DNA from: Intoshia linei
Lineage: Eukaryota; Animalia; Orthonectida
DNA: 40,818 bases
Direction: 5' to 3'
Assembly (NCBI GenBank): GCA_001642005.1
Contig: LWCA01000201.1
Span: 1 to 40,818, forward strand
The notes beneath the pieces are model-generated. The model was not told where the DNA came from. It ran no database searches and worked only from the letters and a program-made list of their open reading frames with translations. Positions 1,962-40,818 of this stretch are shown here, one piece after another (position 1 is the first letter of the stretch; each line of letters starts with the position of its first letter). The position numbers and the translations under genes were made by a program.

Positions 1962-4114
1962 ATGATAAAGTTAAATTTTTTAACTGACTGGAAATCAGTG
2001 GGTGATTCAATTTTGAAAATCATGTACACTAAAAAATGCACTTGTCGAGAAATGTCTGATCTATATTCAAAAATTTATTCAATATGCTTGTGGGATGAAC
2101 AAAGTATCTGTAAAATAACGAAATGGTTGGAAAATGAATTTATTAAATATTTTAGTTTGCAAGCTCAAAAATTGAACACATTTGTGTGCGACGAATACAC
2201 TTCAGAGTCCAATGAAACAAACACTGAATTGACGAATTGTTATGCTGATATATGGAATGATTTTTTAGGTATTTATGAATGCATACCAAAAGCTTTTCGA
2301 CAGCTAGATTTACAAAAATTGATCCAATTGTCAGGATATCCAGAAATACGGGGAAAGCACAGTTTTGTGGCAGAATTAATGATTGTTTGTTTTTATAAGC
2401 TTGTGTTCTTTAGTTATGAAGACGATTTGTTGAATGTCTATTTTACAGCATTAAATTCCCTCAGAAATGAAACTATCATTGAGGACAAAATGAAAGAAAA
2501 CATTTTTAAAATTATTGAAATTTATGAATATTTACCTGTAAAACAAAAAAGAATGAATTTTCAAATTAAATTTTGGCAAAATATTTTTACCTTTTATAAT
2601 TATTGGATTATAAACAAATTAGATTTATTGACATTTTCTCATTTTATTGAAAAATTATTTCCTTTAGAAGTTTCTTTCTTTCTTTGTTCAAGTTCAAATT
2701 TGACAAAGCATCTTCCTGATTCTGCAATAGAAGACATGCCTAAAAAATCATACAAAGAATTAGAAATCTATATAATTGACAAATCATACAATTTTATTTC
2801 ACCACTCAAATCTAAAAGATCTGCTCTTTCGGATTTTAAACTATTTTTGGTTGATCATTTTATTTTAAAATATAAAAAGTTGATTCCTAATTTACTTTGC
2901 ATCATCAACCTGAAGTGTAAGGATAGGGATATATATAAAATAATCAATTTTTTGTCCTGCTATCCTACCATTTTTGAGGAAACCATTACGAAATTAAAAG
3001 AATATTTTGTAGCTCACCATTTACCACAAATTGAATCCCATGAATTGAATAATTATTTACCGCTTTTGGCCAGTATATTTAAAATTGTTGACAAATTTAT
3101 TAATTTATTTGAAAAAGATTTCATCGATTTGTTTCCCAGTTTAAAACATTTCGAAGAGGATGTAATGGTTTCTTTAATTAATTCAGAAAAGGAATCAATT
3201 GTTTTAAAATTTTCAAAAGAAAGTTTAGTCAAGGCTAAAGTTAGTCAAACGCAATTGATTTTAAACGAAATTTGGAACTATCATTTCGAAAACAAAATTC
3301 TAATCCTACAAAATCCTTCTTGTTTCAATTTTGAAAAACCAAATTACCTCATTTTGACTCGGATATTCAAATATTTTAGATCTAAAGATATTTTTGTATG
3401 TATTTATAAAAGAAACCTCATTTATCATCTAATTAATTGTTGTTATAAAAAAAAATTTTTTAACCAATATTTGGATAAAATATTATTTAAAATCACAGAA
3501 TTCGCTCAGGTATTATTTATTATCATGTTTAATTTAATCTTTACCAAATCCAGTCTGAAAATGAGAATTTAAAAAAATTTATTTTACTATCAAAAACTTT
3601 TGTTTAAAAAGAACAAATCATTTAAATTAATTTTTAAATGATCACAATCAAAAATGTATATTTATTAGATGTGTTTATAATATATTTAGCTATCTAATAT
3701 GACTACTGAAGACTATATGGGTCTGAAATTGGTTATTCTTAATTTGAAAAATTTTGATATCAATATTGAATTTGAATCAATCAAACCATACAATTACATT
3801 ACTGAAAAAACTTGCATTAGTATATTTTTATTTCAATTTTATCAATACTGATTAAAAAAATAAAACATTGGTTGAATTTTCGTTTATGTAGATTGAACCA
3901 TGTAAACTGGTTTTGATGTTATATAATTTTATTTTTTGTAGAACCAATCATTTTTTCTAGCTCTGAATATAACGAAATTCAATCAAAATGGGAATGTAAT
4001 GATGGAATTTTTAGAAATATCACTAATCAATTGGATACCCAATTTTTGACAAAGTACCCAAATCGAAGCATAAATTGGGATTTTCAAAAATCTTATTCTA
4101 TCGTATATTTTTAA
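1962..4114 (+). CDS. CUL5: Divergent cullin-5-like protein (exons 1962-3509, 3690-3819, 3942-4114), lacking the C-terminal winged-helix/neddylation region
   Basis: LYSKIYSICLWD, IWNDF...IPKAFRQLD and FKYFRSKDIFVCIYKRNLIYHLI align with CUL5 (VHAVCLWD, LPKPFCQLE, KYVQNKDVFMRYHKAHLTRRLI). Later exons give LKLVILN and FLTKYPNRSINW of the cullin-homology domain. The 3' structure is uncertain. Confidence 0.7.
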
Positions 4115-18400: not shown

Positions 18401-20299
18401 CTAATAAAAGTTTAATCAATTCTATAAATTAATCTATGTCTAGGGAATAACTAAATTGAATTATTATAAATAATAATAATATATCATTGCATGTATAGTA
18501 CATTTTATCATTATAAATACATGTTGAGTAATTAAATTTAGGGGTAATTATTCATAATTATGTCCTGATTTGTAAATCGACTGTATATTAAATTTAATTC
18601 AGATTTATCAGGTATTATTGATAATACATTAATAATTATTTAGAATACGAATCATAGAAATTAGACTTTTAAAAATATGTGAATCTAACAAAATTTGTCA
18701 ATTTTCCCACCCACCTCCCCTACTTAAAACCAGCTGTCTAGTCATGAAAATTTTTAATTTTTTAATTTTTTAATCTTTCTCTTGAGAGAATCAAAAAACG
18801 AGAACAATCGATGTACTTTCATATTTTAATTTCAAGACTAATATACTCAAATCTAATTTTTAACCACTCATTTTTTTATTAATGATATTTATTATCAGTG
18901 GATATTTAAAATAACAGTCTCAACTAAACTAGTCCTGTATCATTAGACTTATTTTGAATTTTACCTGGCACAAATTATAAAAAATTTGGTGTTGATATTT
19001 TTTAATTTTTAGCATTTCTTGCACCAGAGAATACATTTGATCTTTCGATAATACATCGGAATCCAAAGCGGATTTTCGTACATCTTCACAGGGTTTGACA
19101 ATTTCAAAATAAATATTCAACCACATTTTTTTCATACTTGATTTTGATAGTCCTTCAATTTCGGGAAGAGAATCGAGGTAATATTTAATGTGATTTTTAA
19201 AAATGGTGTGAAAATCATCGATGGTGAAAGTTTTTGAGTTAATCATTCTTTCTGAAATAGGTTTACATAGAAATCTAGATTTTAAGCTAATTAAATGAAA
19301 TAAATGAAAACTTACTCATTATAATGATATTTACTAGCAGTCATAAATGCGACATCGACATTATCTATCACTAATTGGCCAGTAATGAATTCGCTAAATC
19401 GGTTTTTCATAATATTAAAAGTTTCCCAATTGATGGCCATCGGCTTAGCTGCAAAATTTGTACATTGTTTCGCGTTAAAGGGAGAAGCAATACAGCGAAT
19501 AACTAAAACGTAAAGTTGTAGATTACGTCTAATATGACAATCGGAATCGTTTGCATTGAATAGATTATCAAACGTGTGACAAAAAAGTTCACTGGATTGT
19601 GAAGGAGATGTTTTATTGTGGTTTTGAGCAGTTTCGTGAGATGACTGTTTAGGGAAATCATTACTATCCGTAACGGAAATATTTGAAATATCGGATGAAT
19701 CCATTTGATTTAAACTAATCATTACATTTTCATCCATTTGCTGGTTATTTGGAGATGGTAACAAATCTTTTTCGTTTTTTGAGTTTCTACTTTGATTAGG
19801 AGAAAATAAGGAATACTTTCGATGTTCAGATTTTTTCAAATCGTTAAAATTTAAAATGTTATCATGATTTTCGAAAATATTCATGTGACTGATCGAGAGT
19901 CGTAAACTCTCATTTATGATTTGCGTAGTGTTTCTTTTTAAATTTTTTTTCTCGCCACTTTTAGAAGACGAGGAGGAAATATTATTTCTATCTAATCTAA
20001 AAAAAATTGGTGATGTTGTAGATTTTGTTGATTGACAAAATTGTGATGCGTTCGAAACATTTTTAAAGCTGGATTTTGTCATTTTTAGTTCAATTTCTTT
20101 TTTTTCAGTAAATGGTGTTTCTATTACATTACCTGCAATGTAAAATTAGAAATAAAAATAATTTACTTTTAGGTGTCGTTTGATTTGATGAATTCGTATT
20201 AAACTCTTGGTTCTTAATGTCAAATTGATTATATATTTCATTGTACATTGCCATTTTATTAACGCTCTCAACTTCTTCATCACTCGATTCTTGTAGCAT
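9433..20299 (-). CDS. CADPS: Calcium-dependent secretion activator (CAPS/UNC-31), >20 exons; last two small exons uncertain
   Basis: N-terminus MLQESSDEE (cf. MLDPSSSEE); LQLYVLVIRCIASPFNAKQ; LDNMDEQAAQIRREL; C2 domain IIYCTMEL; PH domain AGKKLWKKWKLRYFAL and ERIMWVQAIYRATGQ; DEYCSRYG|VRGCYRHL; MHD region DLFSAPVVDYI; KTYHDFELYGV. Confidence 0.95.
12125..12514. mobile_element. pogo/Tigger-like MITE in CADPS intron
   Basis: TA|CAGTCAAAACTGTTTAATTTAAAA ... TTTTAACATAAACAGGTTTGACTG|TA. 24-bp TIR (21/24 identical) with TA target duplication. Confidence 0.8.
12590..12860 (-). repeat. Older diverged internal fragment of the Helitron family
   Basis: Matches TTTGACCGTGAAGGCG..CAGATTGAAATTTTTTGTGTGTGTTAAC..TTCTAGG of the 13.9 kb and 28.4 kb copies. 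A weaker fragment also occurs near 4250-4430. Confidence 0.6.
13562..14468 (-). mobile_element. 3'-truncated non-autonomous Helitron copy
   Basis: 5' end TCCTTACTTATATAATAT at 14468. High identity to the 23527 and 28814 copies. An internal ~50-bp unit is triplicated at ~14145-14300. Confidence 0.8.
15796..16209. mobile_element. hAT Charlie/Buster-type MITE
   Basis: Ends CAGTGGT... and ...GAGAATCCCTG, flanked by an imperfect 8-bp TSD ctctagag/ttctaaag that fits the NTCTAGAN Buster target. Confidence 0.7.
16217..16694. mobile_element. Foldback (long inverted repeat) element
   Basis: Ends GCGACATAATCATCGATT... and ...AATCTATTATCATGTCGC. Inverted similarity continues for well over 100 bp inward (GTGGTTT..TTTTGTCAC.CAATTTTTAAA.A.TTTGAAGATAATTTT). 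Confidence 0.75.
17267..17589. mobile_element. hAT Blackjack-type MITE
   Basis: TIRs TAGGGTTGCCAAC / GTTGGTAACCCTA with perfect 8-bp TSD CTTTGAAT (17259-17266 and 17590-17597). Confidence 0.9.
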
Positions 20300-24511: not shown

Positions 24512-25755
24512 TCATTTATAAACCTTTGGCTTTTGATATAACGGCTTTACTTTATTTTACATGTGCGATTTAAGATTAAGTGTATGATGACTCATTGATG
24601 TGGTAATATAATGCAGTGTGATGCTCAAAAAAATTACTAAGAATACTACGGTGTCCCAAAAGTTTAGGAATTCTGTAGATCTGTGGTGGAGAATTAACAT
24701 TTATAATTTAATTATAATGAATGATTAGTGTTGCCTTCATAAAATGACGTAATTTTAATTAATTTTTGAATATAATGTACAATGTAACTTCAAATATAAA
24801 TTTTTAATTTCCCTTTAACATTATGGTATTTTTTATATTTACGTCAAGTTTTCAAAACTAGTTTTATTCTGATAACATTAAAACATGTAGAGTAGTGAAA
24901 GGTCATGAAATATTGTTAAATTTAGAGTTGGAAAATCATTATAATGTTATCGATTCAGAGATAAAATGGAATTGAGTAGAATTATTGACTTCTATTCATA
25001 CATCAAAATGTTCTTAACCTCCAGTAAATGTATAGGTTTCTTAGTCTGATTTTTATTGTCAATGCTAAATTATTTTCATTGGTCCTAAATCTGGAATTTA
25101 AATTTCAATGTAATTATCAACACATTAAATTGTCTAAAAATAACGATCTTTATGGAGGTTTAAATGGGAAATTATGAGTAATATTGATTTACACCTCTAT
25201 TTTAAATGATTTAATGTTTTTTAATTTTAATTATATGTTTTAGGTAAATTGAATACTGGAATAACTTGCTTGCTGTCCAATATATTAATTATAGCATCGT
25301 AATTTTATTTTCTTTTTCTATCCTAAATAATAATATCTGAAATAGATCATTATCTTTGCGCTACGGAACCATTTGTATAAAAAAGCATTTTCGAAAAATT
25401 GCTTTCTTGTAGTAGTCGTAACTGTAAATAGGTTTGTATTATAAAATTGAATAAAATGTTTCGATACAATCTACTAAAAATAATTACTAACCGATAAAAT
25501 GGGTCAAATAATTTTTAATTTTTTTCAATTATGTACTGTATTATCTTCTACTAATGTGTTGCATTTGGACCTTAGCAAATCCACTTTATCAATACTTTAT
25601 AGAAAATTTTCGAGTATATTTTTGTATATTTGTAACAATTTGCAACATCCAATTACGATAAATACATATTAACAAAAAAGTCCAAGTCGGATTTGAAGTT
25701 TGGAATCAACTAGCTATTATTTATTCAGTGACAGGCAGAAAATTAAATTATAAAA

Positions 25756-28700
25756 TTAAAATATTATGTATTGTATAATATTTTTAATAATATATGCATA
25801 GATTATATAACTGAACCAATATAAAAGTTTCATAGATTTTGACGAATTTCGATTATTACATTTCGAATAATTGCAACAAATTGAACAATTCTAAAATAAA
25901 AAATAAAATTTTAAAACTATATTTACCGTATCATTAATAGAACATTCTTTAGTATTTTCTCTTTTACAATAATTGTTATTACAACCATATTTATATTTTA
26001 TTTCTAGTCCAATTTTTGATTTTTGTGTCTAATATAATTCACTAATTACCAATATACAATAATATTGTTAACAAAAAAATGAATAAACCGCTTGATTATG
26101 TCAATAGAATTAATGTATATTGTTCATTAGAGTTATTCCATTTTGGAATTTTTGTGAAATGTAAAAAAGATATAGTCAGACTCGTCATTAATGAACACCC
26201 TCAATAATAAATTTTTTAATAGTGAATGATTTTTTTTAAATTGTGACTACGCTGTTGTAAAGATTATGAAACTTGATTAATTTATTCAAATTATTCAAAT
26301 TAATTTAGAAAAAATAGTTTTTAATTTTGATATTATTGATTTTTTGAACAAATGTTTGGTGGCTTCTTTAAGGGAAAATTTAAGGAATTTTTTCCCATTT
26401 TGTAAATATTTTGAAGATAATGTAAGGTTCAAAAATTTGTAGGGTTTTTATTTTTTAGACTCCAAAAGAAACGTGAAATATACCACATTTATGACAAATT
26501 AAAAGTTTTTTATCATAAGATTTGGTAAAATCGTGGTTTTCAAAAAAATAATAGAAAAAAAAATTTTTTTATAGGAATATTAAAAAATTAAATGGTTTGA
26601 TAAAATCACATTTTTTATATTGGGGTTTGATTAAATGGATTGTTTTAAAAAATATTGATAAAAATCGATTTTGCCTTGAGGGTTTAAAATGGTATTTTTT
26701 ATTAAATTTTATTAATGGTAGGATAAACGTAGGATTGTTGAAATAATAATATAACAATAGTAATAATATAATATAATAATAAGCTAGACTTTTGGATAAA
26801 TTCCCAACATCTGGCAACTCTGTGATGAATATTAAAAATTCTTCTATAAAAATAAACCAAAGTTAAATAAATTTTTTTATATTTTAATTGAATCTCGCGG
26901 ACCCAGGCATAGTTTTAGAGCACCACGGGTTCCAGGGACCCCAATCGTTAACTACTGCTGTAGAATGACATAAAGCATTTTTCAATTATGGTAAAAAAAA
27001 CTCTGTGTCTTTTTATTTAATGTTTTGATTTTATTATTTATATTATTTTAATTATCTTAGTTTATTCATAACATAGTTAAACATCAAAATTTTTTATTCT
27101 GAACAACATATGAATTCAGTTTTTTAAAAAGATATCCAAATTTCAAAAAAGTGCCTAAAATGGGCATATTGATCGGTCATTAAAAATGTTAAATAAAGTA
27201 GAGGGTGTGAGAAAAAAAAAAAGAAAAAAATTTTTAGTAAGAAAGCTCGATGCGCAGTTATTTTTGCAAAGTCAAATAAAAATATTATTAGTAGAAACAG
27301 TAAGTCAATATTAACAATCAAAAAAATTCTAATTTCCAAAAAATCTGTTATATAGTACCTTTATTATATCATATATTATTATAATGCCAAAAATTAAATT
27401 AAAAATTTGTAGCTTACTTTTAATTATCATTAAAGACACCGTAATAACTGTTTTATAAAGGAGATAATCATGCAAAAATTAAATTTTTTTAATCTAGGAA
27501 CGATGGTTCAAAAAATGTTAAGAATACCTGGTGAGAATTTAAATTTTAGATCCATATTATAATGAAACTAGGTTGACTGTTATGTACTACGTACAAACAG
27601 GACCTAGCTTTTGCACATTTTTATTATACTTAAAAAATAAATTTACGTTGAAAATCTAATTCAAAAATCGTACTATTCACTATTATCAACCCTTAAAAAA
27701 AGTGGTTCCCAAATTTGTGTCAGGTGGAACCATCATATCACATTACTTTTTACTTTAAAGTCAATTATTATATCTTAATTTTTTGTTTGTAAATATAAAA
27801 AAAATATAGTAAAAACAGTCCAATCCTAAAAATTGTCATAAATAGCATAAATTCCAGAAAAAATAAAATTATATAAACCTATTTTGCCATTATCAATGTG
27901 ATAATATATATTCAGTACCAATTTAATATTTACTTAAAAATACCAATTATGTATCAATAATTATTATTATTACTTATAATTAACCGAAGCTTCACTTTAT
28001 AAACAAAAATGAGAATTTGAAAATTAAAAATTGCGTAGCAATAAAATAAATTCCGAAGGAATATTTTATATAGATTTTCACCCATATTTTTTTATTCAAA
28101 GTGTGTAAACGTTCACTGTACATTTTTTTTGAAATTGTAAGATCAATATTTATATGTTTATTTTAATCGAAATATTTGAAAAATATTGGTTGATAATATA
28201 TTAAAAAATATTTTTCATCGGGAATGCGTAGATTTCTCGGGTTGAACTTTTGTATTTATATCAACTGGAATAAGTTCTATCAAAATAAGCTTTTTTTTGA
28301 ATTTTTGGACAGTTAATTATTTCACATTTTATGTTTTAATAAAATATTTCGAAAAAAAAATATGCATACTAAAATGCTTTTTTGACCGTGAAGTCGATAA
28401 TTATTCGGATTGAAATTTTTTGTGTGTGTTAACAGGATACAACTATACAATCTGTAAATTTTTTGAAATTCTAGGGCTGTTTTCATTAAAAAAAGAAGGG
28501 TAATTTAGGGTTTTGGCCCTGAAAATATAATGTTTTTAAATTTAAATATATGATAATGTTTATGATTTTAAAATTTGTATCAGTATATATATTTTTTAAA
28601 TTTCCCAACTCGTTTGGTTTTCAAAAAGAGGGACAATTGAGGTTTTTGACCCGTAAGATGTGAGTTTGGGAGGTTGAAATTATGTTTGTTAACACCTCCG

Positions 28701-31700
28701 GAAAAAACTGTAATTGAAATGTGGACTTTATAAAAATCTAAGACGGGTAGTTATTTAAATAAAGCTGGACACACACACCAACAAAAATCGCGTAGCATAT
28801 TATATAAGTTAGGATGATATATTTAAGTATAACGGGGAAGTATAATTATTTTAATCAATACATGGCAATAATTCATACATCCAATTTTTTCTGAAGGTAA
28901 ACATTTTCCAAATCCATACTTTGTGCAATTGTAACATTGAATATTACCGCAATAATCGTTATTTAAGCTAAGATGAAAATTTCCCATACATTTTACACAT
29001 TTCGGTTTCTGGTATATGCAATTTTTACAGTTTTTATCACAAGCTAAGATAAATTAAGACATTATGTATAAATTACCTAAACACTTGGTTCCATTATTAT
29101 TTAATGTCATATGTGGTTGAGAACATTTGATGCATGTTACAATCATTTTTTTGTTGGTGTAACACTCCAAACAGTTTGGAATAATACTACTACATACTAA
29201 ATACAATTCAAAAATATAAAGGTATTTCATAAAAAATACTATAATTAAAATGTAACTGAATATACAATGCAAAAGTTTTATAGAGTAATGTATATGGTTC
29301 ACATTAATTTAAAACCATTTTAATTTTCTATAATTATTACATTGACAAGTTTTATTTGTATTCATGAAAGCATTCACCATACATTTTATGCATTTTTTAT
29401 GAGTACATTCTTTACAGTGTGAAGTGCAGGCTAATATGTGCAATATATTATGAAATGTCATTAATAAATACCCAAACATATATTTAATGTCGAATTATTA
29501 ATATAACCGGATTTGCATTTTAAACAAGCAATATTGTTGCATATATCACAATTATCAATACATTCTAGTTTTGTGTATTGTATATTAAATGAATTTTTAT
29601 TACTGAAACATTTATTTTGATTGAGGTGATAACCTTGATTACATTTCAAACATACGTTTATGTCATTACAATGAATACATCCGTTCATACAAGCTAAAAT
29701 ATACTTTTCTTGAAAATTTAAATTTATATTTTAAAGCAGGGTTTCTTAACCTGTTTTAAATTTAGCACATCCATTAGCCAGATCAATTATTTCCAACACC
29801 ACTGTTAAAAATAAAAAATAATACCTTAAAATTCAACGTAAAAATCGTATTTTAATGACATTTTTAAAAACCACTCTATTAATATCGAATATAATTAATA
29901 ACAATATGAATGAATGGTAAAAATGAATATACATGGTAGAAGCTGTATTTGATCAGATTTAATTTCACTTCAATTTCAAATATTCCACTTATTTGATCCA
30001 TAAAGTAAAAAATAAAAATAGTTTTTATAGCAACCCTGAAATTAATTCTAGCACCGGGCTAAGAAACTCAATTTTAAAGCATCAAATTTAGTAAACTAGT
30101 AAAAGTTTACGTTTGCATAATTGTAACATGTGTCCATCAATACAATCAACACAGCTGATTTTAAAATTTTTGTGTTGAAAGCATAATTTACAGTTTTGAT
30201 TATTTTCTAAAACAATATTTTTACAGTTCAATAGTGTTAAATGTGCAATGCACATTGGGCATGTAATATAAATAATACTGTAAATAATAATAATGTATAA
30301 TATGTAAAGTGGAGAATTTTATTTTTATCATAAATAATAGATATGTCAATTTACTTAAACATGTATTATTTGGTAACAAACAATATCCATTTTTGCATAA
30401 ATTGCATGTTCCTGTGTTAGTACATGACAAACAGTTGTAACCACAATCTTAATTTTTTTATTTTATTTTTATTTATTTAGTCATTTACCTTTGCATAACA
30501 GTTCTCCATTAATTTCAACGAGATAGTATCCATTTTTGCAAATTATACATTTTTTAGATGTAGAACAATTACGGCAATTTTTGATACATTCTAAATTTTT
30601 TTATTCTCAAATTTAATAGTATTAAAATTTTTTATTTCAGTTCAATTTACATTAATGTTGATACCTTTACACTGAATTGTAAATGTTGAATCAAAGTACA
30701 TGTTATCTTTACATTTTGAGCAGAGGTTTTTGGAAGTACATTCAACACAGTTTGATGAGCATGCTAGTCAACTCAATTATATTTTAATAGAAAAAATGTT
30801 AAATTACGCAAATAGTTAGTAAAACCTTTTAATGGTATTATTAATATACCATAAAAAAGGGTTAATACAATAATAATTTTAACATTTGCAACATGTAATG
30901 TTAAAAAATTGCAATGTTAGAGTCTGAGAAAAAGTAAAGGCGTAATACATGAAATGAAGAAAAGATGTATGAATGTTTACTTTTGAATTAACAGTCAACG
31001 ACAGCTAAGTAGATAGAACTTTAAAATCTTTGTTGTTGATTATTTTCTTAAATTTAAAAATGCATCATAATCATATAAACACAGCGCAAATCCTTAAACC
31101 GCTTAAAAAACAATAGAATCAAAAGATAGAGACAATTAACTATTTTAGTACATGCATATAAATAAAGTTATCCTTTACAAATTTCATGTAAAATGAAATG
31201 TACTTGAATATGTATTTATCATTGAAAATAAGTGTCAAATTCTTAATTAAATTGCACGATTTATGAACTCATTGTATTTACAAAATTTAGCAACTATTGT
31301 AATATAGTAAATTTCTTTATATGTTAGCGTACACTAAAGAGTAACTTTACTCAAATATTGTCATTACTGTAATAGTTATTTACTTAACGAGTTAAGATTT
31401 TCCATTCTTTACTTTACGCAAAACGAGTTGATTAATTTACAAGAGTCTTTAAGTAAAGTAAAGTCAATGAAAAAAATTTTGACGAATATAGTAAATCTAT
31501 TTATATTTAGCAAATATGCATTTTAAAAAAATTCATTTATATTTGAAATAAACTAATTTTTCAAAATAACCATAATGGTTTAATGATTTTCATTATCGTC
31601 AATCGAAAATGGAAGTACCACGAGACATAATTACAGACGTAATTTTTGATTGCAAATCTGTATCAATTTACAATAAATGACATGAAAAATTTGTCGAATA

Positions 31701-34700
31701 TATAAAAACAAATAACATTGAAGAGAATTTAGGCAACTGTTATGGCCGATATGGGAGTTAACAAGATATCACTGAAGGTATGACTTATTTTATTTTAGCG
31801 TCAGTTTAGATGAAAAAACGATACTGTTGTAGATGGATAAACAATGAAAAAAGTAAAAATAGCATTAAATTACAATTAAACCATTGTGTATTTAATAATT
31901 GTACATTTAATTAATTTCTGAATTTAAATAAATTATAATTACAAAATTAAGTGCATATAATTTTCAAGGCTAGAATTAACGATAATATATTCAATTGTAT
32001 TATTTAACTAGTTAAATAATTAAATATTATTTTACGCTAAATCATATACATCCCTTAAGTGATTCAACAATGTATGCATTTATTATTGAAATAAATAGTT
32101 GTATAATAGTAATATATATAATAGTATAACATAATAAATAGGTGTTTTAAAGTTAAATGCTATTTTTCTTTTTTCACTTAATTTTTTTATTGTATTTAAA
32201 CAGATATATACTGTTTCTGATGTCTCTCTTTGAGCTAAACACAGTGCAGTTAAGTGGAATGAACGATTGACATCAATAAATCCAAAAACGAGTAAAGGAT
32301 AATCAGGCTTACAGATTTTATATGTAAACTCTATGTTAAAATTCCTAGCATTTTTCAATATTTTTTTCACAAGTTATTAAAAAAAAAATGGATCTTGAAC
32401 AAATTTAATAATAAAAGCTTTATCTGTTTGGTTTTCCCATCGACTATTTGCATGCGTGATTTTCTTTTGTTTGTACATTCTTGCAATTTTTAGCTTATTC
32501 CTATATATTAAAGATCTTTCGATCACAACTCCCATTTGAACGTTTATTATTTCATTAATCTCAGCAGGTCTTGTGATACCTGATTTAATTAATTCTTTAA
32601 TTTTTTTTCTCGCTTTTATCACGTGTGAAATTAAAACGATTCATCTGAAAGTTTACTTCATTATAAATCCCTCTAATGACTCTCATTTCAACTCCACAAG
32701 AAGAATGATTGATACATCTGTACCTCCTTGTGATTCCATGAACTGTTTTCTTACAGTCTCTAATTCTCCACAGTGATTTTATGAAATTAGCTTCGTTATA
32801 GTTAATCAATGTGAACCAATTTGTTCTTATCATTGTTGCCCTTATGTGTCATAAACTCTTATATAAAGAAATCGGAGGGAAATGATATTAAAAATCAATA
32901 AATTTATTTTAATAATGTACCATTTGTATTAGTCATTACAGCATTCAAATGAATTTGAATACATATAAAAGAGTATAAGTAATCATTTTAATTTTTTAAT
33001 ATCCTTTTTCTGATCTTTATTACGTTTATTTTTTTATTGGCGTTATTTTTCAATAATTTGGCGGTTGGTGTTTAATTTGGCTTACGCAAAATAATATAAT
33101 GCTATATAAATGCATAAATTGTTGAATCATTTAAAAAATATATGATTGCGCGTAAAATAATATTTTATTATTTAACTAGTTAAATAACAGAATTGAATAT
33201 ATTATCGCTGATTATAGTTATTTTGAAAAATTAGTTTATTTCAAATATAAATGAATTTTTTTAAAATGCATATTTGCTTTATTAATATACAGTAAATATA
33301 AATAGATTTACTATATTCGTCAAGAATTTTCTCATTGACACTACTTTACTTAAGACTCGTGTAAATTAATCAACTTGTCTTGCGTAAAGTAAAGAATGGA
33401 AAATCATAACTCGTAAAGTAAATAACTATTCTTATACAAATTTGTAAAAACATGACCGATTTCTTTATTAACTTAATATCTTAATATTACTAGTTATGTA
33501 AAAAAACTTTTATCCATAAAATATCATTTTACAATGGATCCCTCAGTATGAAATTTCATGAAATATATGATTTATTATTATTATAAATATTATAATTACG
33601 CAAACATTTTTGTTTCAGAGAATTATACCAAAAACCAGTTTTACATTTGATACAATTGTTTTTGTTATCGCAGCTTTCACATCCGTAAAGGCAACCTATA
33701 ATAATTGTTGATTAGTTAAATATCAGGTGTCCAACTGGTTGTAATACTGTCGCCTAATCAAAGGTAATATTCTTATGCAAAAATTACTTTATTTAGTATT
33801 AATTTGGTGCCGGATAAATTTATTTTAGTGTGTTAAACTTTATTAAATTAAACTTTATTAAATTTTATATATTATAATTAAATTCTATTTAAATTATTAA
33901 CACATTATTTATCGAACTTTATTAAAACTGATTGGGAAATCCTGCACTAATGTAATGGCAATTAAATTAATTTTATTTATTATTACTTTGACATAAATTA
34001 TCCACTTGATTCCAAAAATATCCAAAAGCGTAATTTCTTCTACAATTGAGACATAAAAATTCCGTGGAATGTTTTATTTCACTACAATCTAAATGTTCTG
34101 TATAATCATGTATATTTTTTCTGAACTATAACATATTTTGTCGAAAACAAATGGATAATTATGGGAAGAACATTCCTTGCATATAGAACTGGTAATGTGA
34201 GAACATTCTATATAAATTATATTAAATATATATTTAAAAATAAATCAAATATTATAACAGTTACTGGGATTCTTGATCTCATTGTATTTTGCAATACAAT
34301 GATATTAATATACCAACAAAAATTTTAAATTTTTTGCATGTTTTTGAAATTTAGATGAATGTGTTGAAAATTTATGTTTATAAATTTAAATTCTCCAACT
34401 CGTTTGATTTATATAAAGAGGGACAATTGGGGTTTTTTATCAGTAAGATGTGAGTTTGGGAGGTTAACATTTATCTTATTATACGTGGCGGAAAAAACTG
34501 TAATTGAAATGTGCACTTTATAAAATTCTAAGACTAGTAGTTATTTCAATAAAGTGGATCACACACAAACAAAAATAGCGTAGCATATTATATAAATAAA
34601 AATTAATACGCTGACGTTGACTTAAAGTATAATTTGAATTTTTAGCAATTTCATACCAATGCAGGATAATAACCTGTCTGACCAAAAATAATTTTGATTG

Positions 34701-37700
34701 CATTCTGTACTAAAAATATACAATGAAAAAATGTTAAATTGATTTACCATATATTTGATTCGTAACATAACTTACAGTTTCGTGGACAGGCTATTTTTAA
34801 AGTATAAGGTATATACAAAGTATGTATGAATAAATACCGGTGCATTTATTTGTAATCCAAATTTTGTCTAAGCAGCTATTACATTGACCTTGGGCAGTGG
34901 ATATTGTACATTCTGTTTTAATATTTTATTAATATACTATATCTGATGCTGTTTTCTAAAGTGGTCCACGAATTCTGAAGGTTTATAAACTTCTAGGATT
35001 CTCGAAATTACGAAAAAAATATTCAAGAGGTTTATACTGGAAATTTTACGTGAATATTTTAGACTGCCAAAATTTCATTGGTTTGGGTCACTTCAACTTT
35101 AGTCGGATCATGAAATTATAGGAACCAGTATACATTATGTATTACAGTACATGTGTTTAAATATACCATCACAAGACCAATTGGGTTTATTCCAAAAATA
35201 TCCGGCATTACACGTTACAGTTGAGACATTGCACATTATACTGTTATTGGGACAACCTGAAATCGTACAATGAAAATTAATATACAATTATAATATTAAC
35301 TATAATAAGTTTTCCCTTCTGATTTCCACATTTTATGACACCCAGTACATTTATCTCTGGTATTTAATGGTTCTCTATCACAAAGCACCTCTAAATTTAT
35401 AAAAAATAGTCAACTTTTGTATTACTGTCGCATGTCTTTCTTTTTGTATTCCAATTTGTACCTTTACGTGATTTACAGCCAATTTCTCCCAAATTTGTAA
35501 GATTTTTGTGATCGGTTTCTTAATTAATTAATTAATAATAATGTAATAATAGTGGATTATAAAAATTTATACATTGCATCAATAAATAATAATTTACTAT
35601 AGCAGGATTTTAATTCTTCATTCCAAACAACAGATTCTTTATTTATTTGACATCTTTTACAAGAATATTCTAAAACGTTTTCATGAATTATTGAAAGAAC
35701 ATTTGAACAGTCCAAGTCTAATTTTTATATAACTACACGTTAAAATTTTAAAAATTTTATTCAAGTACTTTGACAATGATATGAATCATATTTCCATACT
35801 GTTGATTGACATGACTGACAAAGTAGCTTTTCGTTTACTAAATTTAAACAAGATATGGAATTAAAAACACAACTATTTCCATTCCAGTAGTGATTTGTAG
35901 CACCACGGCATTTTATTTTGTTATTTAGAATCACGTTTGTTAAACCTATATTATTTTACATTATTAATATGCATACAGAGTTTCTTATAAATGTAAATTT
36001 TATACCTTTTTAATTTCAAAATAAAAATAATAAACTTCAAAACGAGAATAACAAAGTTCAAAATGATAATAGTAAACTTCAAAACGAGAATATCAAATTT
36101 AATTTATCTGTATCAAAAGTTGCAGTTTCCCACTATCTGAACAATCTTTTATACACTCTAAAAACGATACGACATGAACCTGAAAATGCAAACAATGCCG
36201 TAAATAAAGAGAAAAGAAAAAATTTTACTTTAAGGTTACTTGAATTGATTTTACGTGATTTACTTACACTGAATAAGTTTTCAATAGGATTCAAGTCAGG
36301 ACTATAGGGTAATAAGAATATTTGTTTTACATTTTCTCTTCTTAATAAAGAAATTATTTCTGCACTGGTGAAACCTAACATTATCTATTACAATAATCGG
36401 TCTGTTCTCAAATACTCTATAAATCTTACTCTTATTTAAAAATTTCAGAAAGAATCTTTGCATAATTTTAATTCTTGTAAAATTATCATTAACCCATTTT
36501 CTCCCAATGTAACCATATGGTCACACAAAAATAAAATATTAAAAAGGTGAATAAGTTTTAAATTAAACAAAGTAAATATTAATGCATAGCATATTTAGAA
36601 TCGTGTAAGCATTCACAATGTATTTTTGATGGTCATTAGGTTAATAATGTCGTAACTTAGTGTCCACAGGTAAAAACATTTTTTGTTCTGAAATAAAAAT
36701 AAAATTAAAATTAAAGATTTTTTGATCTAGGTTATGCACAACTAGGTTCAATTTTAGATAAAAAATATGGAAAATCACGACTTAACCGATGAGGATTCGG
36801 CGGACTCAGAAGATGAAACGAAAAATTTGCCATCAGTTTTGAGTGGTAATCAGTTGTGTGCTCCAGCTGAAAAAAGACACCTTGTGAATGACTCAGATGA
36901 TGAAAATGTGCCGTTATCGTATTTTTCAAATGTATCTCATTGTTTCGACTGGTATCTCTTAACAAAGAATATGTATTGTTCAGCATTTCCTGAATCTAAT
37001 TATACAAAATACAGAGGATACTCGCCCACCAAATTTTTTGAATTGTGTTTCGATGACGAAGTAGTTAACTATATTATCAATGAATCTAATATATATTCTT
37101 TTTAACAGAATTTATTGAATATACCCATAAATGTTGGAGAGTTCAAAACATTTATTGGTATACTTATTATATCCGGATATAACAATTCGCCGAGTATGTC
37201 ATCTTATTGAAGCATCAGTGATGACCTCAAAAACTTAACTATATTTAATGCAATGCGACGTAATAGATTTAACGAAATAATGAGATCCGTACACTTCAAA
37301 AACAATTTAAGTCTTAATTATGGGGATAAATATACCAAATTAAGACCACTAATATTATTACTGAAATCTTGTTTATGAAACTTTTTGTAATGTCTCAAAA
37401 TATTTCTCACGATAAATCTATGGTGGAATATTTTGGAAGACATGGGTGTACGCATACTATATTAAATAAGTCCATTCGGTTCGGCTATAAAATATGGTGT
37501 CAAAATTTAACAGCTGGTTATTTAGTCAATTTTGAACCATACCAAGGAAGCTGTAATGTTGATGAAACCAGTAAGTTTGGAAAATGCGCTGCGACAGTGC
37601 TTTTAGATTATTAAACGAGTATACCTCATACAAAATCAATTTTCCGTATACCTTTTATATAGATAATTACTTTACCACACTGCCATTAATGATAGAAATG

Positions 37701-40305
37701 AAATCACGTGGCTATAACAGTACTGGTACCATACGAGCTAATCGTATACCGTTTTTAAGCAAATTAACTAATAAAAAGTGAATGGCCAAAAAACCTCGTG
37801 GAACTTACGAATGCGTAATAGGTACAACAGATAAGAACAAAACTGTTTTTCTGACCAGATGGAAAGATAACGCAATTGTCATTGTTGTGTCAACATTAAA
37901 TGACTCCACACAATCTAAAAAAATTCAACGATGATGCAAAAAGGATTAATATGGATAACATATGGGAGGTACTGATAGAATGGGTCAAAACATTAACGCT
38001 TATAGAATAGGAATACGTGGTAATAAGTGGTGGTGGTGTATATTCACATGGATGCTGGATGTTGCTTTGAATAATGCATGGGTATTATGTAAAAAGAGTA
38101 GAATTAATATTACCAATCTGCATTTTAGACATAGAATAGCTATGTACTATTTAGAAAAATATGTTCTACCCCTAAAAAATAAGCGGAAAAGGTATAATTG
38201 CAATTTTTCTGAATTGAGATATGATAATACGTCTCATTTGGTTAGAAATGTTCCACACAATACAAGAAGAAGGTGTGTAATGCTAGGATGTAGTAGTGTT
38301 GGTCGCACTGAATGTTCAAAATGTGACGTAGGTTTANCCTTAAAAAATAAGCTGAAAAGGTATAATTGCAATTTTTCTGAATTGAGATATGATGATACGA
38401 CTCATTTGGTTAGAAATGTTTCACGCAATACAAGAAGAAGGTAATGTGTGTGTAATGCTAGGATGTAGTAGTGTTGGTCGCACTGAATGTTCAAAATGTG
38501 ACGTAGGTTTATGTGTAGCATGTTTCATACCATACCATACCATACAAAATAATTAAGGTAAATTATACTTTTAACTAAATAATTATAATTAATATAAAGG
38601 TAAATTCATTTACATTAATTGTTAATTAATATATTTCATTTAGATATATTCAAAAATTCCATTCNACTTTTAATTAAATAATTATAATTAATATAAAAGT
38701 AAATTCATTTACATTAATTGTTAATTAATATATTTCATATAGATATATCCAAAAATTCCATTCAAAGAAATTATTTTGTATAATTATAAATAAATATATT
38801 TTCAGTTCATTTTTGTACACATATTTTCCCAACGTGACTATATGGTCACATGTAATATCTAAATAACTACTAACGCAAATTCTTTTAAATTTTGTAGGAC
38901 ATAGTTAAATGGTTCAATTAGTAAAATTCTAAAATTTTATTAAAATCGGAAAAAAAAAATTCCAAAATTGGCTTGGGAGAAAATGGGTTAATCACTTCTA
39001 CACTTGTTTTTTTCGTCGAACTTCAAATATTAATTACATTAACTAGTATTTACTTAAAAATTTGTATTATTGAAAAATAAATTTATATTGTTGAAAAATA
39101 AATTTATATTATTGAAAATAAAATTTATATTTATGAGAAACAATGTATGTGATATAATTTATATACAAAATGTATATAGATGGTATTATGTAGTTACAAA
39201 CATTAAAATTATAAACGAATACTCAAGTAATATTCTCCATTCGGATAGGCGGCATTATAACCCATTCCATAGCACGAAGATGACAGTGTAACAGCACATT
39301 TCATTGCTTTGATTGAATATAAAAAGTAAATAAAATACATACGCACCATAACACCGTTACCCCACTCCCTCCCAAAACATTTCAGACACCTCTGCATGAT
39401 TGACTAAAAGAATATAAACGTAATACAAACACATATTGGAATAACCAAGTCAGTTGTACAGGCATAACCTAAATATAAAACCCAGTAAAGATATTAACAT
39501 ATTAATAATATTATTTTCTAAATAAAAATTGTGAACCTGAATGAACACATATGCTAGCATCTATATCCCAATGTAATTCCTCACAAGCACCACATTGAGT
39601 TTTAGATAAATTGTGAAGGTCTTTACAAGAAAAAACTATAATTTTATGTATATATATTTCATATATAAAAACAGGTTAAGCATTTTTCACCATTCCAATG
39701 GTTTTGTAGACGTCTACATCCAATGCATTTATCAATCGTATTTAACAAACTCGAATCATAACAGTTAATTTCTAAAAAATTTATACACTATTGTATGTTG
39801 TATAAGGTAAATGTTACCATCGCGTTGAAGTTAAGGTTGCGAGTCGCGAAATATTAATACGTATATCGCGACTAAAAGTATTAAAATACCTGAATTAAAA
39901 ATCGACGTTTACCAAAGCCCCAGTAAAAATAAACTTTTTTTTTTAAAAATTATTATTGTCTTTTATGGGTGATAAAAGAGGAATCATTGCTATTTACACT
40001 GTACTATAAAATGGGTGAAGCCAGATTTCTTATTTTTTTCAAGCATATTTCTTGGGATAGCATAGTATTGTGCATCATTAAGATTAAAAGAAAATTTCAT
40101 AGATACAGTTTTGGAAAGGTACCGCTGAACAAACTTTGACCAACATAACTAAATGGAGGTCTCTTTTACGATCAGTAAAATTTTATTTTTTCAACAAACG
40201 GTAATATCAATTTATTACTATGACATGATCCATCCCAATAATGATTGTGGCAGCCAATACATTTATCTTTGGTATTTAATAATTCATCAATATCGCAATC
40301 AACAG
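25756..40305 (-). CDS. Large cysteine-rich repeat protein (~890 aa, at least 28 exons): Trp-type Cys repeats + furin/VSP-like repeats + Ly6/three-finger domain + putative GPI signal; leader exon not resolved
   Basis: Manually spliced stop-free GT-AG exons: 40305-40219, 39771-39673, 39635-39537, 39468-39446, 39403-39343, 39306-39223, 35945-35769, 35717-35598, 35518-35426, 35390-35301, 35256-35167, 34912-34838, 34790-34748, 34709-34657, 34207-34127, 34088-33987, 33695-33600, 30763-30665, 30590-30489, 30447-30355, 30206-30111, 29693-29604, 29564-29472, 29430-29341, 29196-29077, 29043-28862, 26028-25927, 25890-25756. Ends CSICCNYSKCNNRNSSKSMKLLYWFSYIIYAYIIKNIIQYIIF*. Confidence 0.8.
26330..26440 (+). 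repeat. Fragment of the same foldback family as 16217-16694
   Basis: TATTGATTTTTT..GTGGCTTCTTTAAGGGAAA..TTTTGAAGATAAT..CAAAAATTTGTAGGGTTTTTA resembles the element arms. Confidence 0.5.
27568..28814 (-). mobile_element. Complete non-autonomous Helitron (~1250 bp) in intron of the Cys-rich gene
   Basis: Minus strand A|TCCTAACTTATATAA at 28814; 3' CTGTTTGTACGTAGTACATAACAGTCAACCTAG|T at 27568. Confidence 0.85.
29737..30071. mobile_element. hAT MITE in intron of the Cys-rich gene
   Basis: Imperfect TIR CAGGGTTTCTTAACC / GGCTAAGAAACTCAA with perfect 8-bp TSD TTTTAAAG (29729-29736 and 30072-30079). Confidence 0.8.
31371..33430 (-). mobile_element. Mutator-like element (MULE) with ~320-bp TIRs
   Basis: 31371-31576 plus 31979-32082 are inverted copies of 33107-33430. 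An internal MULE transposase remnant is present. No TSD seen; the outermost right end is probably lost. Confidence 0.85.
32083..32833 (-). pseudogene. Frameshifted, truncated MULE transposase
   Basis: RRYRCINHSSC zinc-finger-like N-terminus; TYKICKPDYPLLVFGFIDVNRSFHLTALCLAQRETSETV matches the MULE domain. Split over three ORFs. Confidence 0.8.
34377..34595 (-). repeat. 5' fragment of the Helitron family
   Basis: AAGATGTGAGTTTGGGAGG..TCTAAGAC..ACACACAAACAAAAATAGCGTAGCATATTATATAA shared with the other copies. Confidence 0.75.
35976..36488 (-). mobile_element. IS630/Tc1-like transposase remnant (3' part)
   Basis: FLKFLN..RPIIVIDNVRFH, then after a frameshift ..QIFLLPYSPDLNPIENLFS (second D and E of the DDE triad). 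Possible TA|CAGAG terminus at 35974-35980. Confidence 0.75.
36493..38987 (+). mobile_element. Full-length piggyBac element
   Basis: Perfect 15-bp TIR CCCATTTTCTCCCAA / TTGGGAGAAAATGGG, with TTAA on both sides (36489-36492 and 38988-38991). Internal transposase present. Confidence 0.95.
36767..38556 (+). pseudogene. Inactivated piggyBac (PGBD3-like) transposase
   Basis: SP.KFFELCFDD, AMRRNRF, SHDKSMVEYFGRHG..IRFGYKIW, IDNYFTT, GTIRANR, WKDN, MGGTDRM, KWWW.IF, and C-terminal RRRC..C..ECSKCDVGLCVACF..YH. Multiple stops and frameshifts. Confidence 0.92.
39070..39132. repeat. Short tandem repeat, 3 x 21 bp
   Basis: TTGAAAAATAAATTTATATTG repeated three times. Explains the spurious KNKFILL ORF. 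Confidence 0.8.
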
Positions 40306-40818
40306 CTTAAATAATGTATTATTAAATGTACAGTACATGATAGACATTATATGAATACAAAATTTTTATTTGTAATCTCAGCTTTAAAGATGTGCTTTCT
40401 AGGAACACTTTATCAGAAAAAAAATAATTATATATACTATAAATTATAATATAATATATAAAATAAGTATATAAATTAATTAATGTTTTATTGCTATAAA
40501 AATTATAATGTTCTTTTAATAAAAATTGAATTAAACCCAATTAGTATTTAATGTTGTAGGTTTGTCAAATACAACCTTTTTAAATCATTTTTTCAATTAA
40601 TCAAAAATCAAAAAATTTAATTGTTTCCATTAAAAAATGGTAAAACCATTATTAGCGTGCTTTATTTTAATCGTTTTATACTTTTGTATATACAAAACTA
40701 ATTAATATATTTTAATATATATTAACATATTAACATTGACATTATGAACATTAGAGTGTCCCACTTTTTTTATAGAAAAAGTATACCCCGGCAATGTTTC
40801 CCATTTACCTCAAGGGTA

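What the first reader, a model, noticed from the sequence alone, without database searches (positions are those of the whole stretch)
25756..40305. Hidden ~890-aa modular Cys-rich surface protein with one repeat per symmetrical phase-1 exon
Seen: 28 exons splice into a stop-free frame. 21 are phase 1-1 with lengths divisible by 3 (75-177 nt), and two further exon pairs (23+61 and 43+53 nt) are jointly symmetrical, so any repeat module can be skipped, duplicated or swapped in frame. The repeats keep Cys spacing but differ strongly elsewhere. Established: tandem CxxC, membrane-anchored coats are used by Giardia VSPs and ciliate immobilisation antigens, and phase-1 modules typify shuffled extracellular domains. 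Inference: an undescribed metazoan variable surface coat or recognition protein, possibly diversified by combinatorial splicing or exon shuffling. Best candidate novel system in the window.
Basis: partly seen in the sequence, partly recalled or inferred. Interest (0 to 1): 0.9.

Follow-up and report, generated by a model that had tools for sequence, protein, structure and literature searches.

The report
Furin-repeat surface protein gene, Intoshia
This is a real, transcribed gene of the parasite Intoshia linei for a long cysteine-rich rod of furin-like repeats, one repeat per exon, probably anchored to the cell surface; it belongs to a family of about twelve genes, and nothing shows that its exons are mixed to make variants.

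Summary
On the minus strand, 25 exons (40305 to 25756) splice into a stop-free 832-codon frame. Twenty are phase 1-1, each holding one cysteine repeat. Spliced RNA contigs from three 2024 runs confirm every junction from exon 30763 to exon 29043.

The gene is already annotated as hypothetical protein A3Q56_02223 of Intoshia linei (807 aa), so it is not hidden, but that model is wrong in three ways:
- Its N-terminus comes from a mariner relic.
- One mini-exon is not used in the RNA.
- About 1.3 kb of 5' coding sequence lies off this contig, probably on contig C1716.

The real protein is about 1,230 aa. The repeats are furin-like (FU) repeats (profile match to R-spondin FU domains, E 1e-8), plus a four-Cys Trp-containing variant. 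The end looks like a Ly6/uPAR domain with a GPI-type tail, and at least six paralogs share it. However, the RNA contigs stop at 28862-28906 and do not show the tail exons.

The family has about 12 genes with a fixed repeat order. Repeats are old (35% identity). All three runs show one constitutive isoform, with almost no polymorphism. Combinatorial variation is therefore unsupported. The scan found this family before on other DNA (s1-778016).

The parts
40219..40305 (-). Exon, phase 1-1, 87 nt. First W-type four-Cys repeat of a conserved pair.
   Evidence: Predicted. Homologous exon in at least 6 paralog loci. Matches P0001 residues 336-375. No RNA was laid here.
39673..39771 (-). Exon, phase 1-1, 99 nt. 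Second W-type repeat of the pair.
   Evidence: Predicted. Paralog exons. Matches P0001 residues 365-398.
39537..39635 (-). Exon, phase 1-1, 99 nt. W-type repeat.
   Evidence: Predicted. RNA contig X4 runs 93 nt beyond exon 35945 at the 5' end, which fits this exon.
35769..35945 (-). Exon, phase 1-1, 177 nt. Two W-type repeats.
   Evidence: In annotated model P0002.
35598..35717 (-). Exon, phase 1-1, 120 nt. W-type repeat.
35426..35518 (-). Exon, phase 1-1, 93 nt. Degenerate W-type repeat that has lost Cys.
35301..35390 (-). Exon, phase 1-1, 90 nt. W-type repeat that lacks the last Cys.
35167..35256 (-). Exon, phase 1-1, 90 nt. Cys repeat.
34838..34912 (-). Exon, phase 1-1, 75 nt. W-type repeat.
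34748..34790 (-). Exon, 43 nt, phase 1-2. First half of an FU repeat split by a phase-2 intron.
34657..34709 (-). Exon, 53 nt, phase 2-1. Second half of that repeat; the pair is jointly symmetrical (96 nt).
34133..34207 (-). Exon, phase 1-1, 75 nt. An alternative donor at 34127 would give 81 nt.
   Evidence: The boundary is not settled by RNA.
33987..34088 (-). Exon, phase 1-1, 102 nt. An alternative acceptor lies at 34097.
33600..33695 (-). Exon, phase 1-1, 96 nt. FU repeat.
30665..30763 (-). Exon, phase 1-1, 99 nt. FU repeat.
   Evidence: RNA contigs X2-X4. In profile A1.
30489..30590 (-). Exon, phase 1-1, 102 nt. FU repeat.
   Evidence: RNA joint 30665/30590 in three runs.
30355..30447 (-). 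Exon, phase 1-1, 93 nt. FU repeat.
   Evidence: RNA joint 30355/30206. The contig positions leave exactly 93 nt for it.
30111..30206 (-). Exon, phase 1-1, 96 nt. FU repeat that lacks the first Cys.
   Evidence: RNA joints 30355/30206 and 30111/29693.
29604..29693 (-). Exon, phase 1-1, 90 nt. FU repeat.
   Evidence: RNA joint 30111/29693. This contradicts the annotated mini-exon 29801-29751 and the acceptor at 29708.
29472..29564 (-). Exon, phase 1-1, 93 nt. FU repeat. It follows a 39-nt in-frame, stop-free intron.
   Evidence: RNA joint 29604/29564 in three runs.
29341..29430 (-). Exon, phase 1-1, 90 nt. FU repeat.
   Evidence: RNA joints.
29077..29196 (-). Exon, phase 1-1, 120 nt. FU repeat.
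   Evidence: RNA joints.
28862..29043 (-). Exon, 182 nt. Last FU repeat plus the first five Cys of the Ly6/uPAR-like domain. If unspliced, the frame runs on to a stop at 28826-28828.
Evidence: Annotated donor at 28861.
25927..26028 (-). Exon, phase 0-0, 102 nt. Middle of the Ly6/uPAR-like domain.
   Evidence: Annotated model. The Cys spacing across the splice equals that of the uninterrupted domain of paralog P0001. No RNA support.
25756..25890 (-). Last exon. Holds the C-x2-CC-x5-CN motif, a short polar spacer, a hydrophobic GPI-type tail and the stop. AATAAA lies about 40 nt downstream.
   Evidence: Homologous exon downstream of the FU arrays in 6 paralogs. No RNA support in X3 or X4.

Best explanation
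The stretch is most of one transcribed gene of the orthonectid Intoshia linei: locus A3Q56_02223, on the minus strand.

The protein is about 1,230 aa and of extracellular type. It is a long disulfide-stapled rod built from these parts, in order:
- an N-terminal block of furin-like (FU) repeats. This block lies off the contig, probably on the minus strand of contig C1716, positions 3352-177;
- a block of about 12 four-Cys, Trp-containing repeats that look like FU repeats that have lost one disulfide;
- a second block of 11 FU repeats;
- a membrane-proximal Ly6/uPAR-like domain, followed by a C-terminal hydrophobic signal that would be swapped for a GPI anchor.

Nearly every repeat sits in its own phase 1-1 exon. 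This is the footprint of ancient tandem exon duplication, not of a working diversity generator: the mRNA is spliced constitutively.

The gene is one of about 12 diverged paralogs with the same fixed domain order. Most likely they form part of the parasite's outer surface coat or take part in cell adhesion or recognition.

Shown: the exon structure, splicing and expression of the FU block, the FU identity, the family and its colinearity.
Inferred: the 5' part on C1716, secretion, the Ly6 fold, GPI anchoring and the surface role.
For: Species and gene:
- P0002 is the NCBI hypothetical protein A3Q56_02223 of Intoshia linei, on a 40,818-nt contig.
- The window is the whole contig C1281 of a 41.6-Mb assembly.

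Splicing and expression:
- Spliced contigs of 3623, 3597 and 2055 nt in three 2024 runs carry all junctions from 30763 to 29043 with GT..AG ends. None of these joints is in the DNA run.

FU identity:
- 20 repeats align as C-x3-C-x2-C-x5-C-x2-C-x10-12-C.
- Their profile hits R-spondin-1 and R-spondin-2 FU domains at E 1.2e-8.
- Outside Intoshia, several of the best hits carry Pfam VSP or Furin-like_2.

W-type repeat:
- It aligns with the C-terminal half of FU (hhalign E 2.8e-4).

Family:
- W-type exons lie on 12 contigs. There are 101 FU matches on about 21 contigs.
- P0002 and P0001 are colinear over 800 residues (E 4e-44).

Ly6/GPI end:
- The Cys spacing in P0002 equals that in the uninterrupted paralog domain.
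- Homologous tail exons lie downstream of the FU arrays on C2065, C1055, C2611, C1651 and C2509.
- Atlas neighbours of residues 700-807, by features and by structure, are mainly UPAR_LY6, QVR and Toxin_TOLIP clusters.

Secretion:
- Signal-peptide-like N-termini occur in paralogs P0003 and the L015 ORF.

5' part:
- 12 phase 1-1 exons (1191 nt) lie at the low end of C1716 on the minus strand. The last of them precedes exon 40305 in the same order as in P0001.
- The joined frame is stop-free with 180 Cys.
- 3455 nt of coding sequence down to 28862, plus 140-210 nt, equals the RNA contig lengths.
Against: - No RNA contig joins 28862 to 26028. In runs X3 and X4 the last exon (25890-25756) has depth 0 and 0.55, against 44 and 36 for the gene body. 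The three contigs end at 28862, 28879 and 28906. The main RNA in those samples may therefore end in the intron and lack the anchor.
- Pfam finds no Ly6 or FU family above its threshold.
- A single-sequence AlphaFold model of the paralog's Ly6-like domain failed (pLDDT 60, helical).
- No signal-peptide exon was found for this gene.
- The link to C1716 rests on colinearity and a length budget. The repeat shared by the two contig ends matches over only about 12-16 nt.
- Contigs drop rare variants, so minor splice isoforms are not excluded.
Confidence: 0.72

Rival explanations
1. The main product is a secreted or shed, non-anchored protein. The transcript ends by polyadenylation inside the last long intron, shortly after 28862. 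That gives a frame ending at the stop at 28826-28828, without the rest of the Ly6-like domain or the GPI signal. The protein would then be a matrix or cuticle component, not a membrane coat.
For: - All three RNA contigs end at 28862-28906, and none reaches the tail exons.
- An ATTAAA lies at 28857-28852, 24 nt before the in-frame stop.
- The GenBank model of paralog P0005 also ends by read-through at the matching point.
Against: - The tail exons are intact, have good splice sites and an AATAAA, and are conserved downstream of the FU arrays in six paralogs.
- The read-through product would carry a truncated domain and an odd number of Cys (173 against 180).
- The X3 contig ends exactly at the last base before the annotated donor, as a splice branch in the assembly graph would give.
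Confidence: 0.25
2. This is the first reader's idea: a variable surface coat. The symmetrical exons would be skipped, duplicated or swapped by combinatorial splicing or ongoing exon shuffling, to vary the protein in the manner of Giardia VSPs or ciliate immobilisation antigens.
For: - Nearly all exons are phase 1-1, so any skip would stay in frame.
- The gene belongs to a multigene family of about 12 diverged members in a parasite.
- Contigs cannot show rare isoforms.
Against: - There is one identical splice pattern in three runs.
- There are two exonic differences from the reference in about 1 kb, both shared by the 2016 DNA run and the 2024 RNA.
- Repeats are 35% identical, and adjacent ones are no closer than distant ones.
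- The order is fixed and colinear between paralogs at 25% identity.
- An almost intronless paralog has the same architecture.
Confidence: 0.06
3. The exons belong to more than one gene. In particular, the last two exons (26028-25756) would form a separate small Ly6 gene downstream of the FU gene.
For: - No RNA joins them to the FU gene.
- Typical Ly6 genes are small genes of three exons (PMC4839075).
Against: - No signal-peptide exon or N-terminal half of a Ly6 domain was seen between 28826 and 26028.
- The first five Cys of the domain sit in the last FU exon here, in C2065, and in the models P0003 and P0005.
- In P0001 the FU repeats and the Ly6-like domain lie in one uninterrupted exon.
Confidence: 0.07

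Closest known systems
Furin-like (FU) repeat arrays, as in R-spondins and the Cys-rich tails of PCSK5 and PCSK6 (growth-factor-receptor Cys-rich superfamily)
   Same: The six-Cys spacing is the same. The profile matches R-spondin FU domains at E 1e-8. The repeats form tandem arrays with one repeat per exon. The protein is of extracellular type.
   Different: There is no protease, thrombospondin or receptor domain. The array is far longer (about 35 repeats). It includes a four-Cys Trp-containing variant with no match in Pfam or the PDB. It ends in a Ly6-like domain. Pfam thresholds are not reached.
Giardia VSPs and ciliate immobilisation antigens (CxxC-rich surface coats of protists)
   Same: They share CxxC-rich tandem repeats. 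Several of the best non-Intoshia hits carry Pfam VSP or come from Tetrahymena or Entamoeba. Both are multigene families in a parasite. A GPI-type tail occurs here as in ciliate antigens (that ciliate antigens are GPI-anchored is from my own knowledge).
   Different: This is an animal gene with about 37 exons. There is no VSP transmembrane plus CRGKA tail. The repeat order is fixed and colinear between paralogs. There is no sign of switching or variation.
Ly6/uPAR (LU) GPI-anchored proteins such as CD59, Drosophila Ly6 proteins and schistosome Ly6-like tegument proteins
   Same: It has an N-terminal C-x2-C and a C-terminal CC-x5-CN, followed by a polar spacer and a hydrophobic end. The last exon encodes the anchor signal, as in typical Ly6 genes (PMC4839075). 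Its Atlas neighbours are LU families.
   Different: The domain has 12 Cys, where my recollection of typical LU domains is 8-10. It sits behind a stalk of more than 1,100 aa instead of standing alone. No Pfam LU model matches it. I found no paper that pairs furin-like repeats with Ly6.

Membership tests
Furin-like (FU) repeat | Tandem units of about 32 aa with six Cys, spaced C-x3-C-x2-C-x5-C-x2-C-x10-12-C | tested here: met
   In the alignment of 20 repeats, five Cys columns are invariant and one is at 90% or more.
Furin-like (FU) repeat | Significant sequence-profile match to proven FU domains | tested here: met
   The profile hits R-spondin-1 and R-spondin-2 FU domains: 13 distinct PDB sequences, best E 1.2e-8.
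Furin-like (FU) repeat | Pfam Furin-like_2 (PF15913) above its curated cut-off | tested here: not met
   The best single exon scores 20.6 bits against a cut-off of 28. 5 of 20 repeats hit at E up to 0.1. Whole proteins give no hit.
Ly6/uPAR (LU) domain | N-terminal C-x2-C and C-terminal CC-x4/5-C-N motif in a Cys-rich domain of about 80 aa | tested here: met
   Present in P0002, P0001 and the C2065 gene, with matching spacing.
Ly6/uPAR (LU) domain | Match to the Pfam UPAR_LY6, Toxin_TOLIP or QVR models, or to solved LU chains | tested here: not met
   No Pfam hit at E up to 10 and no relevant PDB hit.
Ly6/uPAR (LU) domain | Three-finger fold | tested here: inconclusive
   The Atlas model gives TM 0.48-0.59 to LU clusters. 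My AlphaFold model without an alignment was unusable, at pLDDT 60.
GPI-anchored protein | C-terminal small residues, a short polar spacer and a hydrophobic end with no cytosolic tail | tested here: met
   Seen in three paralogs. Three more tail exons were found.
GPI-anchored protein | N-terminal signal peptide | tested here: inconclusive
   Not found for this gene: the 5' end is off the contig and C1716 holds no good candidate. Present in paralogs P0003 and the L015 ORF.
GPI-anchored protein | The tail exons are part of the mature mRNA, and the protein is released by PI-PLC | tested here: inconclusive
   The RNA contigs end before the tail exons. The biochemistry cannot be tested here.
Giardia VSP | C-terminal transmembrane helix with a conserved CRGKA tail, and a Pfam VSP match | tested here: not met
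   The end is a Ly6-like domain plus a hydrophobic tail. Pfam VSP hits 1 of 20 repeats, at E 0.018.
Giardia VSP | One-at-a-time expression and antigenic switching | not testable with these tools
   This needs single-cell or stage-resolved expression data.

The most novel reading that the evidence does not exclude
The family of about 12 FU-rod/Ly6/GPI genes is the main surface coat of the orthonectid at the host interface. Each gene would switch between an anchored form (spliced to the Ly6/GPI exons) and a shed form (polyadenylated in the last intron), by life stage or by cell type. This would give a highly reduced animal parasite a protist-like cysteine-rich coat.
Probability: 0.12. Interest if true: 0.6.

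Novelty: new variant of a known kind. Interest (0 to 1): 0.35.

Why it matters
Intoshia linei has one of the smallest animal genomes, yet it keeps about a dozen very large genes of this one family. That points to an important role, most plausibly at the parasite surface, and no orthonectid surface molecule came up in my searches.

A stalk of furin-like repeats on a Ly6-like GPI module is an architecture I did not find described. It gives concrete targets for antibodies, in situ probes and stage-specific RNA work.

It also corrects a public gene model: a transposon-derived start, a false exon, and a gene split over two contigs. And it offers a clean contrast for studies of intron loss or gain, since one paralog has an intron per repeat and another has almost none.

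It is not a new mechanism of diversity.

Tried and rejected
- Other genetic codes (ciliate and similar) do not merge the exons into long ORFs, so the standard code with introns applies.
- Pfam gave nothing on single exons, on the whole annotated protein or on paralogs, apart from sub-threshold Furin-like_2 hits and a DDE_3 hit on the false N-terminus.
- A PF15913 search of the genome found nothing, and its controls also found nothing, so it is uninformative.
- phmmer of the last exon against 1.84 billion representatives found only the gene's own model.
- The PDB profile search with the W-type repeat gave only chance CxxCH heme-motif hits.
- The Atlas gave no feature hit and only weak structural neighbours for the W-type block.
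- The single-sequence AlphaFold model of the paralog's Ly6-like domain was unusable, so no fold search was run.
- MAFFT misplaced the exon pieces in an alignment of Ly6 fragments, so I dropped it.
- C1486 and C1670 were examined as possible 5' parts and rejected: C1486 has its own copy of the first W-pair exon, and C1670 holds a different small gene.
- The signal-peptide exon search on C1716 gave one unconvincing candidate.
- The search for a protein derived from the RNA contigs found none in the protein collection.
- The joined (spliced) model was built only inside scripts, to count length, stops and Cys. All searches used single exons by reference or proteins returned by the tools.
Full report
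**What the sequence is.** The window is the whole 40,818-nt contig C1281 of a 41.6-Mb assembly in 3,520 contigs. It is 22-30% G+C. Protein searches identify the organism as the orthonectid Intoshia linei. A paralog ORF is 99% identical to NCBI protein A3Q56_02836. The model of this gene itself is A3Q56_02223 (P0002, 807 aa), recorded on a contig of exactly 40,818 nt. Other genetic codes do not remove the need for introns.

**The observation.**
- Scanning the minus strand for AG...GT windows in phase 1-1 with at least 3 Cys gives a clean chain of exons from 40305 down to 29043.
- Mapping P0002 back on the window reproduces 24 exon junctions.
- My in-window model, corrected by RNA, has 25 exons, 2,501 nt and 832 codons, with no internal stop. 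It has 120 Cys and 16 N-glycosylation sequons.
- Only 13.6% of random windows of the same lengths are stop-free.
- Twenty exons are phase 1-1 with lengths of 75-177 nt. The 43+53 nt pair splits one repeat by a phase-2 intron.

**RNA evidence.**
- One DNA run of 2016 holds 55% of the sampled words of 25750-35700. Three runs of a 2024 study hold 12-20% of them. By my tally, exons make up about 19% of that stretch.
- Laid on 25500-31400, the three 2024 runs each give one long spliced contig: 3,623, 3,597 and 2,055 nt.
- These contigs carry joints at 30665/30590, 30355/30206, 30111/29693, 29604/29564, 29472/29430, 29341/29196 and 29077/29043. All have GT..AG ends on the minus strand, and none is in the DNA run.
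- The positions inside the contigs leave exactly 93 nt for exon 30447-30355. All nine FU exons are therefore present in each run.
- The 39-nt intron 29565-29603 is in frame and stop-free, yet it is spliced out.
- The annotated mini-exon 29801-29751 and the acceptor at 29708 are not used.
- In the roughly 1 kb of exons covered, the 2024 RNA differs from the reference at two places only (28911 and 30419). Both are also seen in the 2016 DNA run.

**The 5' end.**
- In the longest contigs, 2,630-2,700 nt lie 5' of exon 30763. The window can supply only 1,299 nt (exons 40305 to 33600).
- The annotated N-terminus (36381-36240) is a Tc1/mariner relic. It matches Pfam DDE_3 and has 56-83% identical copies on many contigs.
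- The contig ends at 40818 inside a high-copy repeat.
- Contig C1716 carries 12 further phase 1-1 exons (1,191 nt) on its minus strand, close to its low end.
- The last of these exons precedes exon 40305 in the same order as in paralog P0001.
- Joined inside a script, the frame stays open: 1,229 codons and 180 Cys.
- The 3,455 nt of coding sequence down to 28862, plus 140-210 nt of leader, equals the contig lengths.
- I therefore take C1716 as the probable 5' part. This is an inference. The shared repeat at the two contig ends is only weak support.
- I found no convincing signal-peptide exon. Paralog P0003 and the upstream ORF of the A3Q56_02836 gene start with signal-peptide-like sequences.

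**What the repeats are.**
- Ten exons of this gene and ten of the C2065 paralog align as C-x3-C-x2-C-x5-C-x2-C-x10-12-C.
- A profile of them hits the furin-like domains of R-spondin-1 and R-spondin-2 in the PDB, with best E 1.2e-8.
- Pfam's Furin-like_2 is hit only below its threshold. Whole proteins give nothing.
- The best outside proteins are protist or metagenome proteins, several of which carry Pfam VSP or Furin-like_2, at 28-31% identity. That is about as close as the paralogs themselves.
- The upstream block consists of a four-Cys unit: x-D-C-x9-11-C-x2-C-x3-5-Y/W-W-x3-6-C.
- This unit has no PDB or Atlas feature match. It aligns with the second half of FU (hhalign E 2.8e-4, probability 41%).
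- I read it as an FU repeat that lost its second and third Cys.

**The 3' end.**
- The annotated model splices 28862 to 26028, and then 25927 to 25890.
- The resulting domain has the Cys spacing x2, x7, x7, x3, x17, x4, x7, x6, x2, CC, x5, CN.
- The uninterrupted domain of P0001 has x2, x5, x9, x5, x18, x4, x7, x9, x2, CC, x5, CN.
- A short polar spacer and a hydrophobic end without a cytosolic tail follow. AATAAA lies about 40 nt after the stop.
- A profile of this last exon finds matching exons just downstream of the FU arrays on C2065, C1055, C2611, C1651 and C2509.
- Atlas neighbours of residues 700-807 are mainly Ly6/uPAR-type clusters, both by features (0.84-0.87) and by structure (TM 0.48-0.59). 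These are leads, not proof.
- Pfam and PDB sequence searches are negative, and my single-sequence AlphaFold model failed.
- Against the anchored form: the three RNA contigs end at 28906, 28879 and 28862.
  - The last exon has depth 0 in X3 and 0.55 in X4, against 44 and 36 for the gene body.
  - The coverage seen at 25894-26090 is explained by 20-nt chance matches of highly expressed repeat contigs.
- An ATTAAA at 28857-28852 and an in-frame stop at 28826-28828 would allow a truncated transcript.
- Against the truncated form: the X3 contig ends exactly at the annotated donor, and the truncated product would have an odd number of Cys.
- I rate it about 0.75 that the Ly6/GPI exons belong to the gene's functional product. 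Which form dominated in those samples stays open.

**The family.**
- W-type exons occur on 12 contigs. FU exons give 101 matches on about 21 contigs.
- Where both types occur on one contig, the order is FU, then W-type, then FU.
- P0002 and P0001 are colinear over 800 residues at 25% identity (E 4e-44).
- The C2065 gene has the same layout of one repeat per 90-102 nt exon. The A3Q56_02836 gene has only three exons, encoding about 788, 36 and 558 aa.
- Within this gene, FU repeats are 35% identical in protein. They are 59% identical in DNA, against 56 ± 3.5% for shuffled sequence. Neighbouring repeats are no closer than distant ones.
- The arrays are therefore old and stable.

**Interpretation.**
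- The gene encodes a long rod of furin-like repeats. It is probably secreted and held on the outer membrane leaflet through a Ly6-like module and a GPI anchor.
- The layout of one repeat per phase-1 exon is the usual trace of exon duplication in extracellular animal proteins.
- Nothing found here shows that the layout is used to make variants. There is one splice form in three runs, almost no polymorphism, a fixed order among paralogs, and an almost intronless paralog.
- The 'variable coat' idea survives only as a weak possibility at the level of which family member is expressed.

**Known or new.**
- The gene and its paralogs sit in GenBank and UniRef as hypothetical 'EGF-like domain-containing' proteins.
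- I found no paper that describes them or the pairing of FU repeats with Ly6.
- Another agent of this scan reached the same reading on a paralog (s1-778016).
- I class it as a new variant of known kinds, of moderate interest.

**Limits.**
- Only one 5.9-kb stretch could be laid with reads, and only as contigs.
- The spliced model was never sent to a search tool. It was joined only inside scripts, for counting.

Noticed in passing
window 36767-38556 (+): A piggyBac-type transposase relic lies in the 3.6-kb intron (Pfam DDE_Tnp_1_7, E 3e-6). It is broken into several ORFs. About 40 residues of its C-terminal part are duplicated on either side of an N at 38337, which may be an assembly artefact.
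   Followed up: partly
window 36133-36570 (-): A Tc1/mariner transposase relic. The GenBank model A3Q56_02223 uses its ORF (36381-36240) as a false first exon. Copies at 56-83% identity lie on at least 12 other contigs.
   Followed up: yes
window 27470-28815: A high-copy repeat lies in the last long intron. Its word depth is in the thousands in both the DNA and the RNA runs, so the family is transcribed somewhere. A similar element seems to sit in the matching intron of the C2065 paralog.
   Followed up: partly
window 40748-40818: The contig ends inside a repeat found at 85-99% identity on more than 30 other contigs, often near their ends. This element seems to break the assembly.
   Followed up: partly
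L015 / L018 (G000:C1055:8204-13640, minus): Paralog A3Q56_02836 encodes the same architecture in 3 exons. This gene and C2065 have an intron at nearly every repeat boundary. That is a sharp case of intron loss or gain within one family. The annotated start also omits an upstream in-frame signal-peptide-like start.
   Followed up: partly
window 29565-29603: A 39-nt intron that is in frame and free of stops is nevertheless removed in all three RNA runs. Sequence alone could not have told it from coding sequence.
   Followed up: yes
L020-L022 (G000:C1486:21470-28285, plus): A family member has the N-terminal FU block and three W-type exons, but no further Cys-rich exons in the next 7.5 kb to the contig end. 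It may be truncated, or it may have a very long intron.
   Followed up: no
window 1890-3569 (+) and 19315-20145 (-): Two long ORFs (560 and 277 aa) have no usable Pfam match. I did not examine them further.
   Followed up: no
window 32083-32833 (-): Three ORFs of 78-95 aa lie in the 2.8-kb intron between exons 33600 and 30763. They look like another mobile-element relic, but they were not identified.
   Followed up: no
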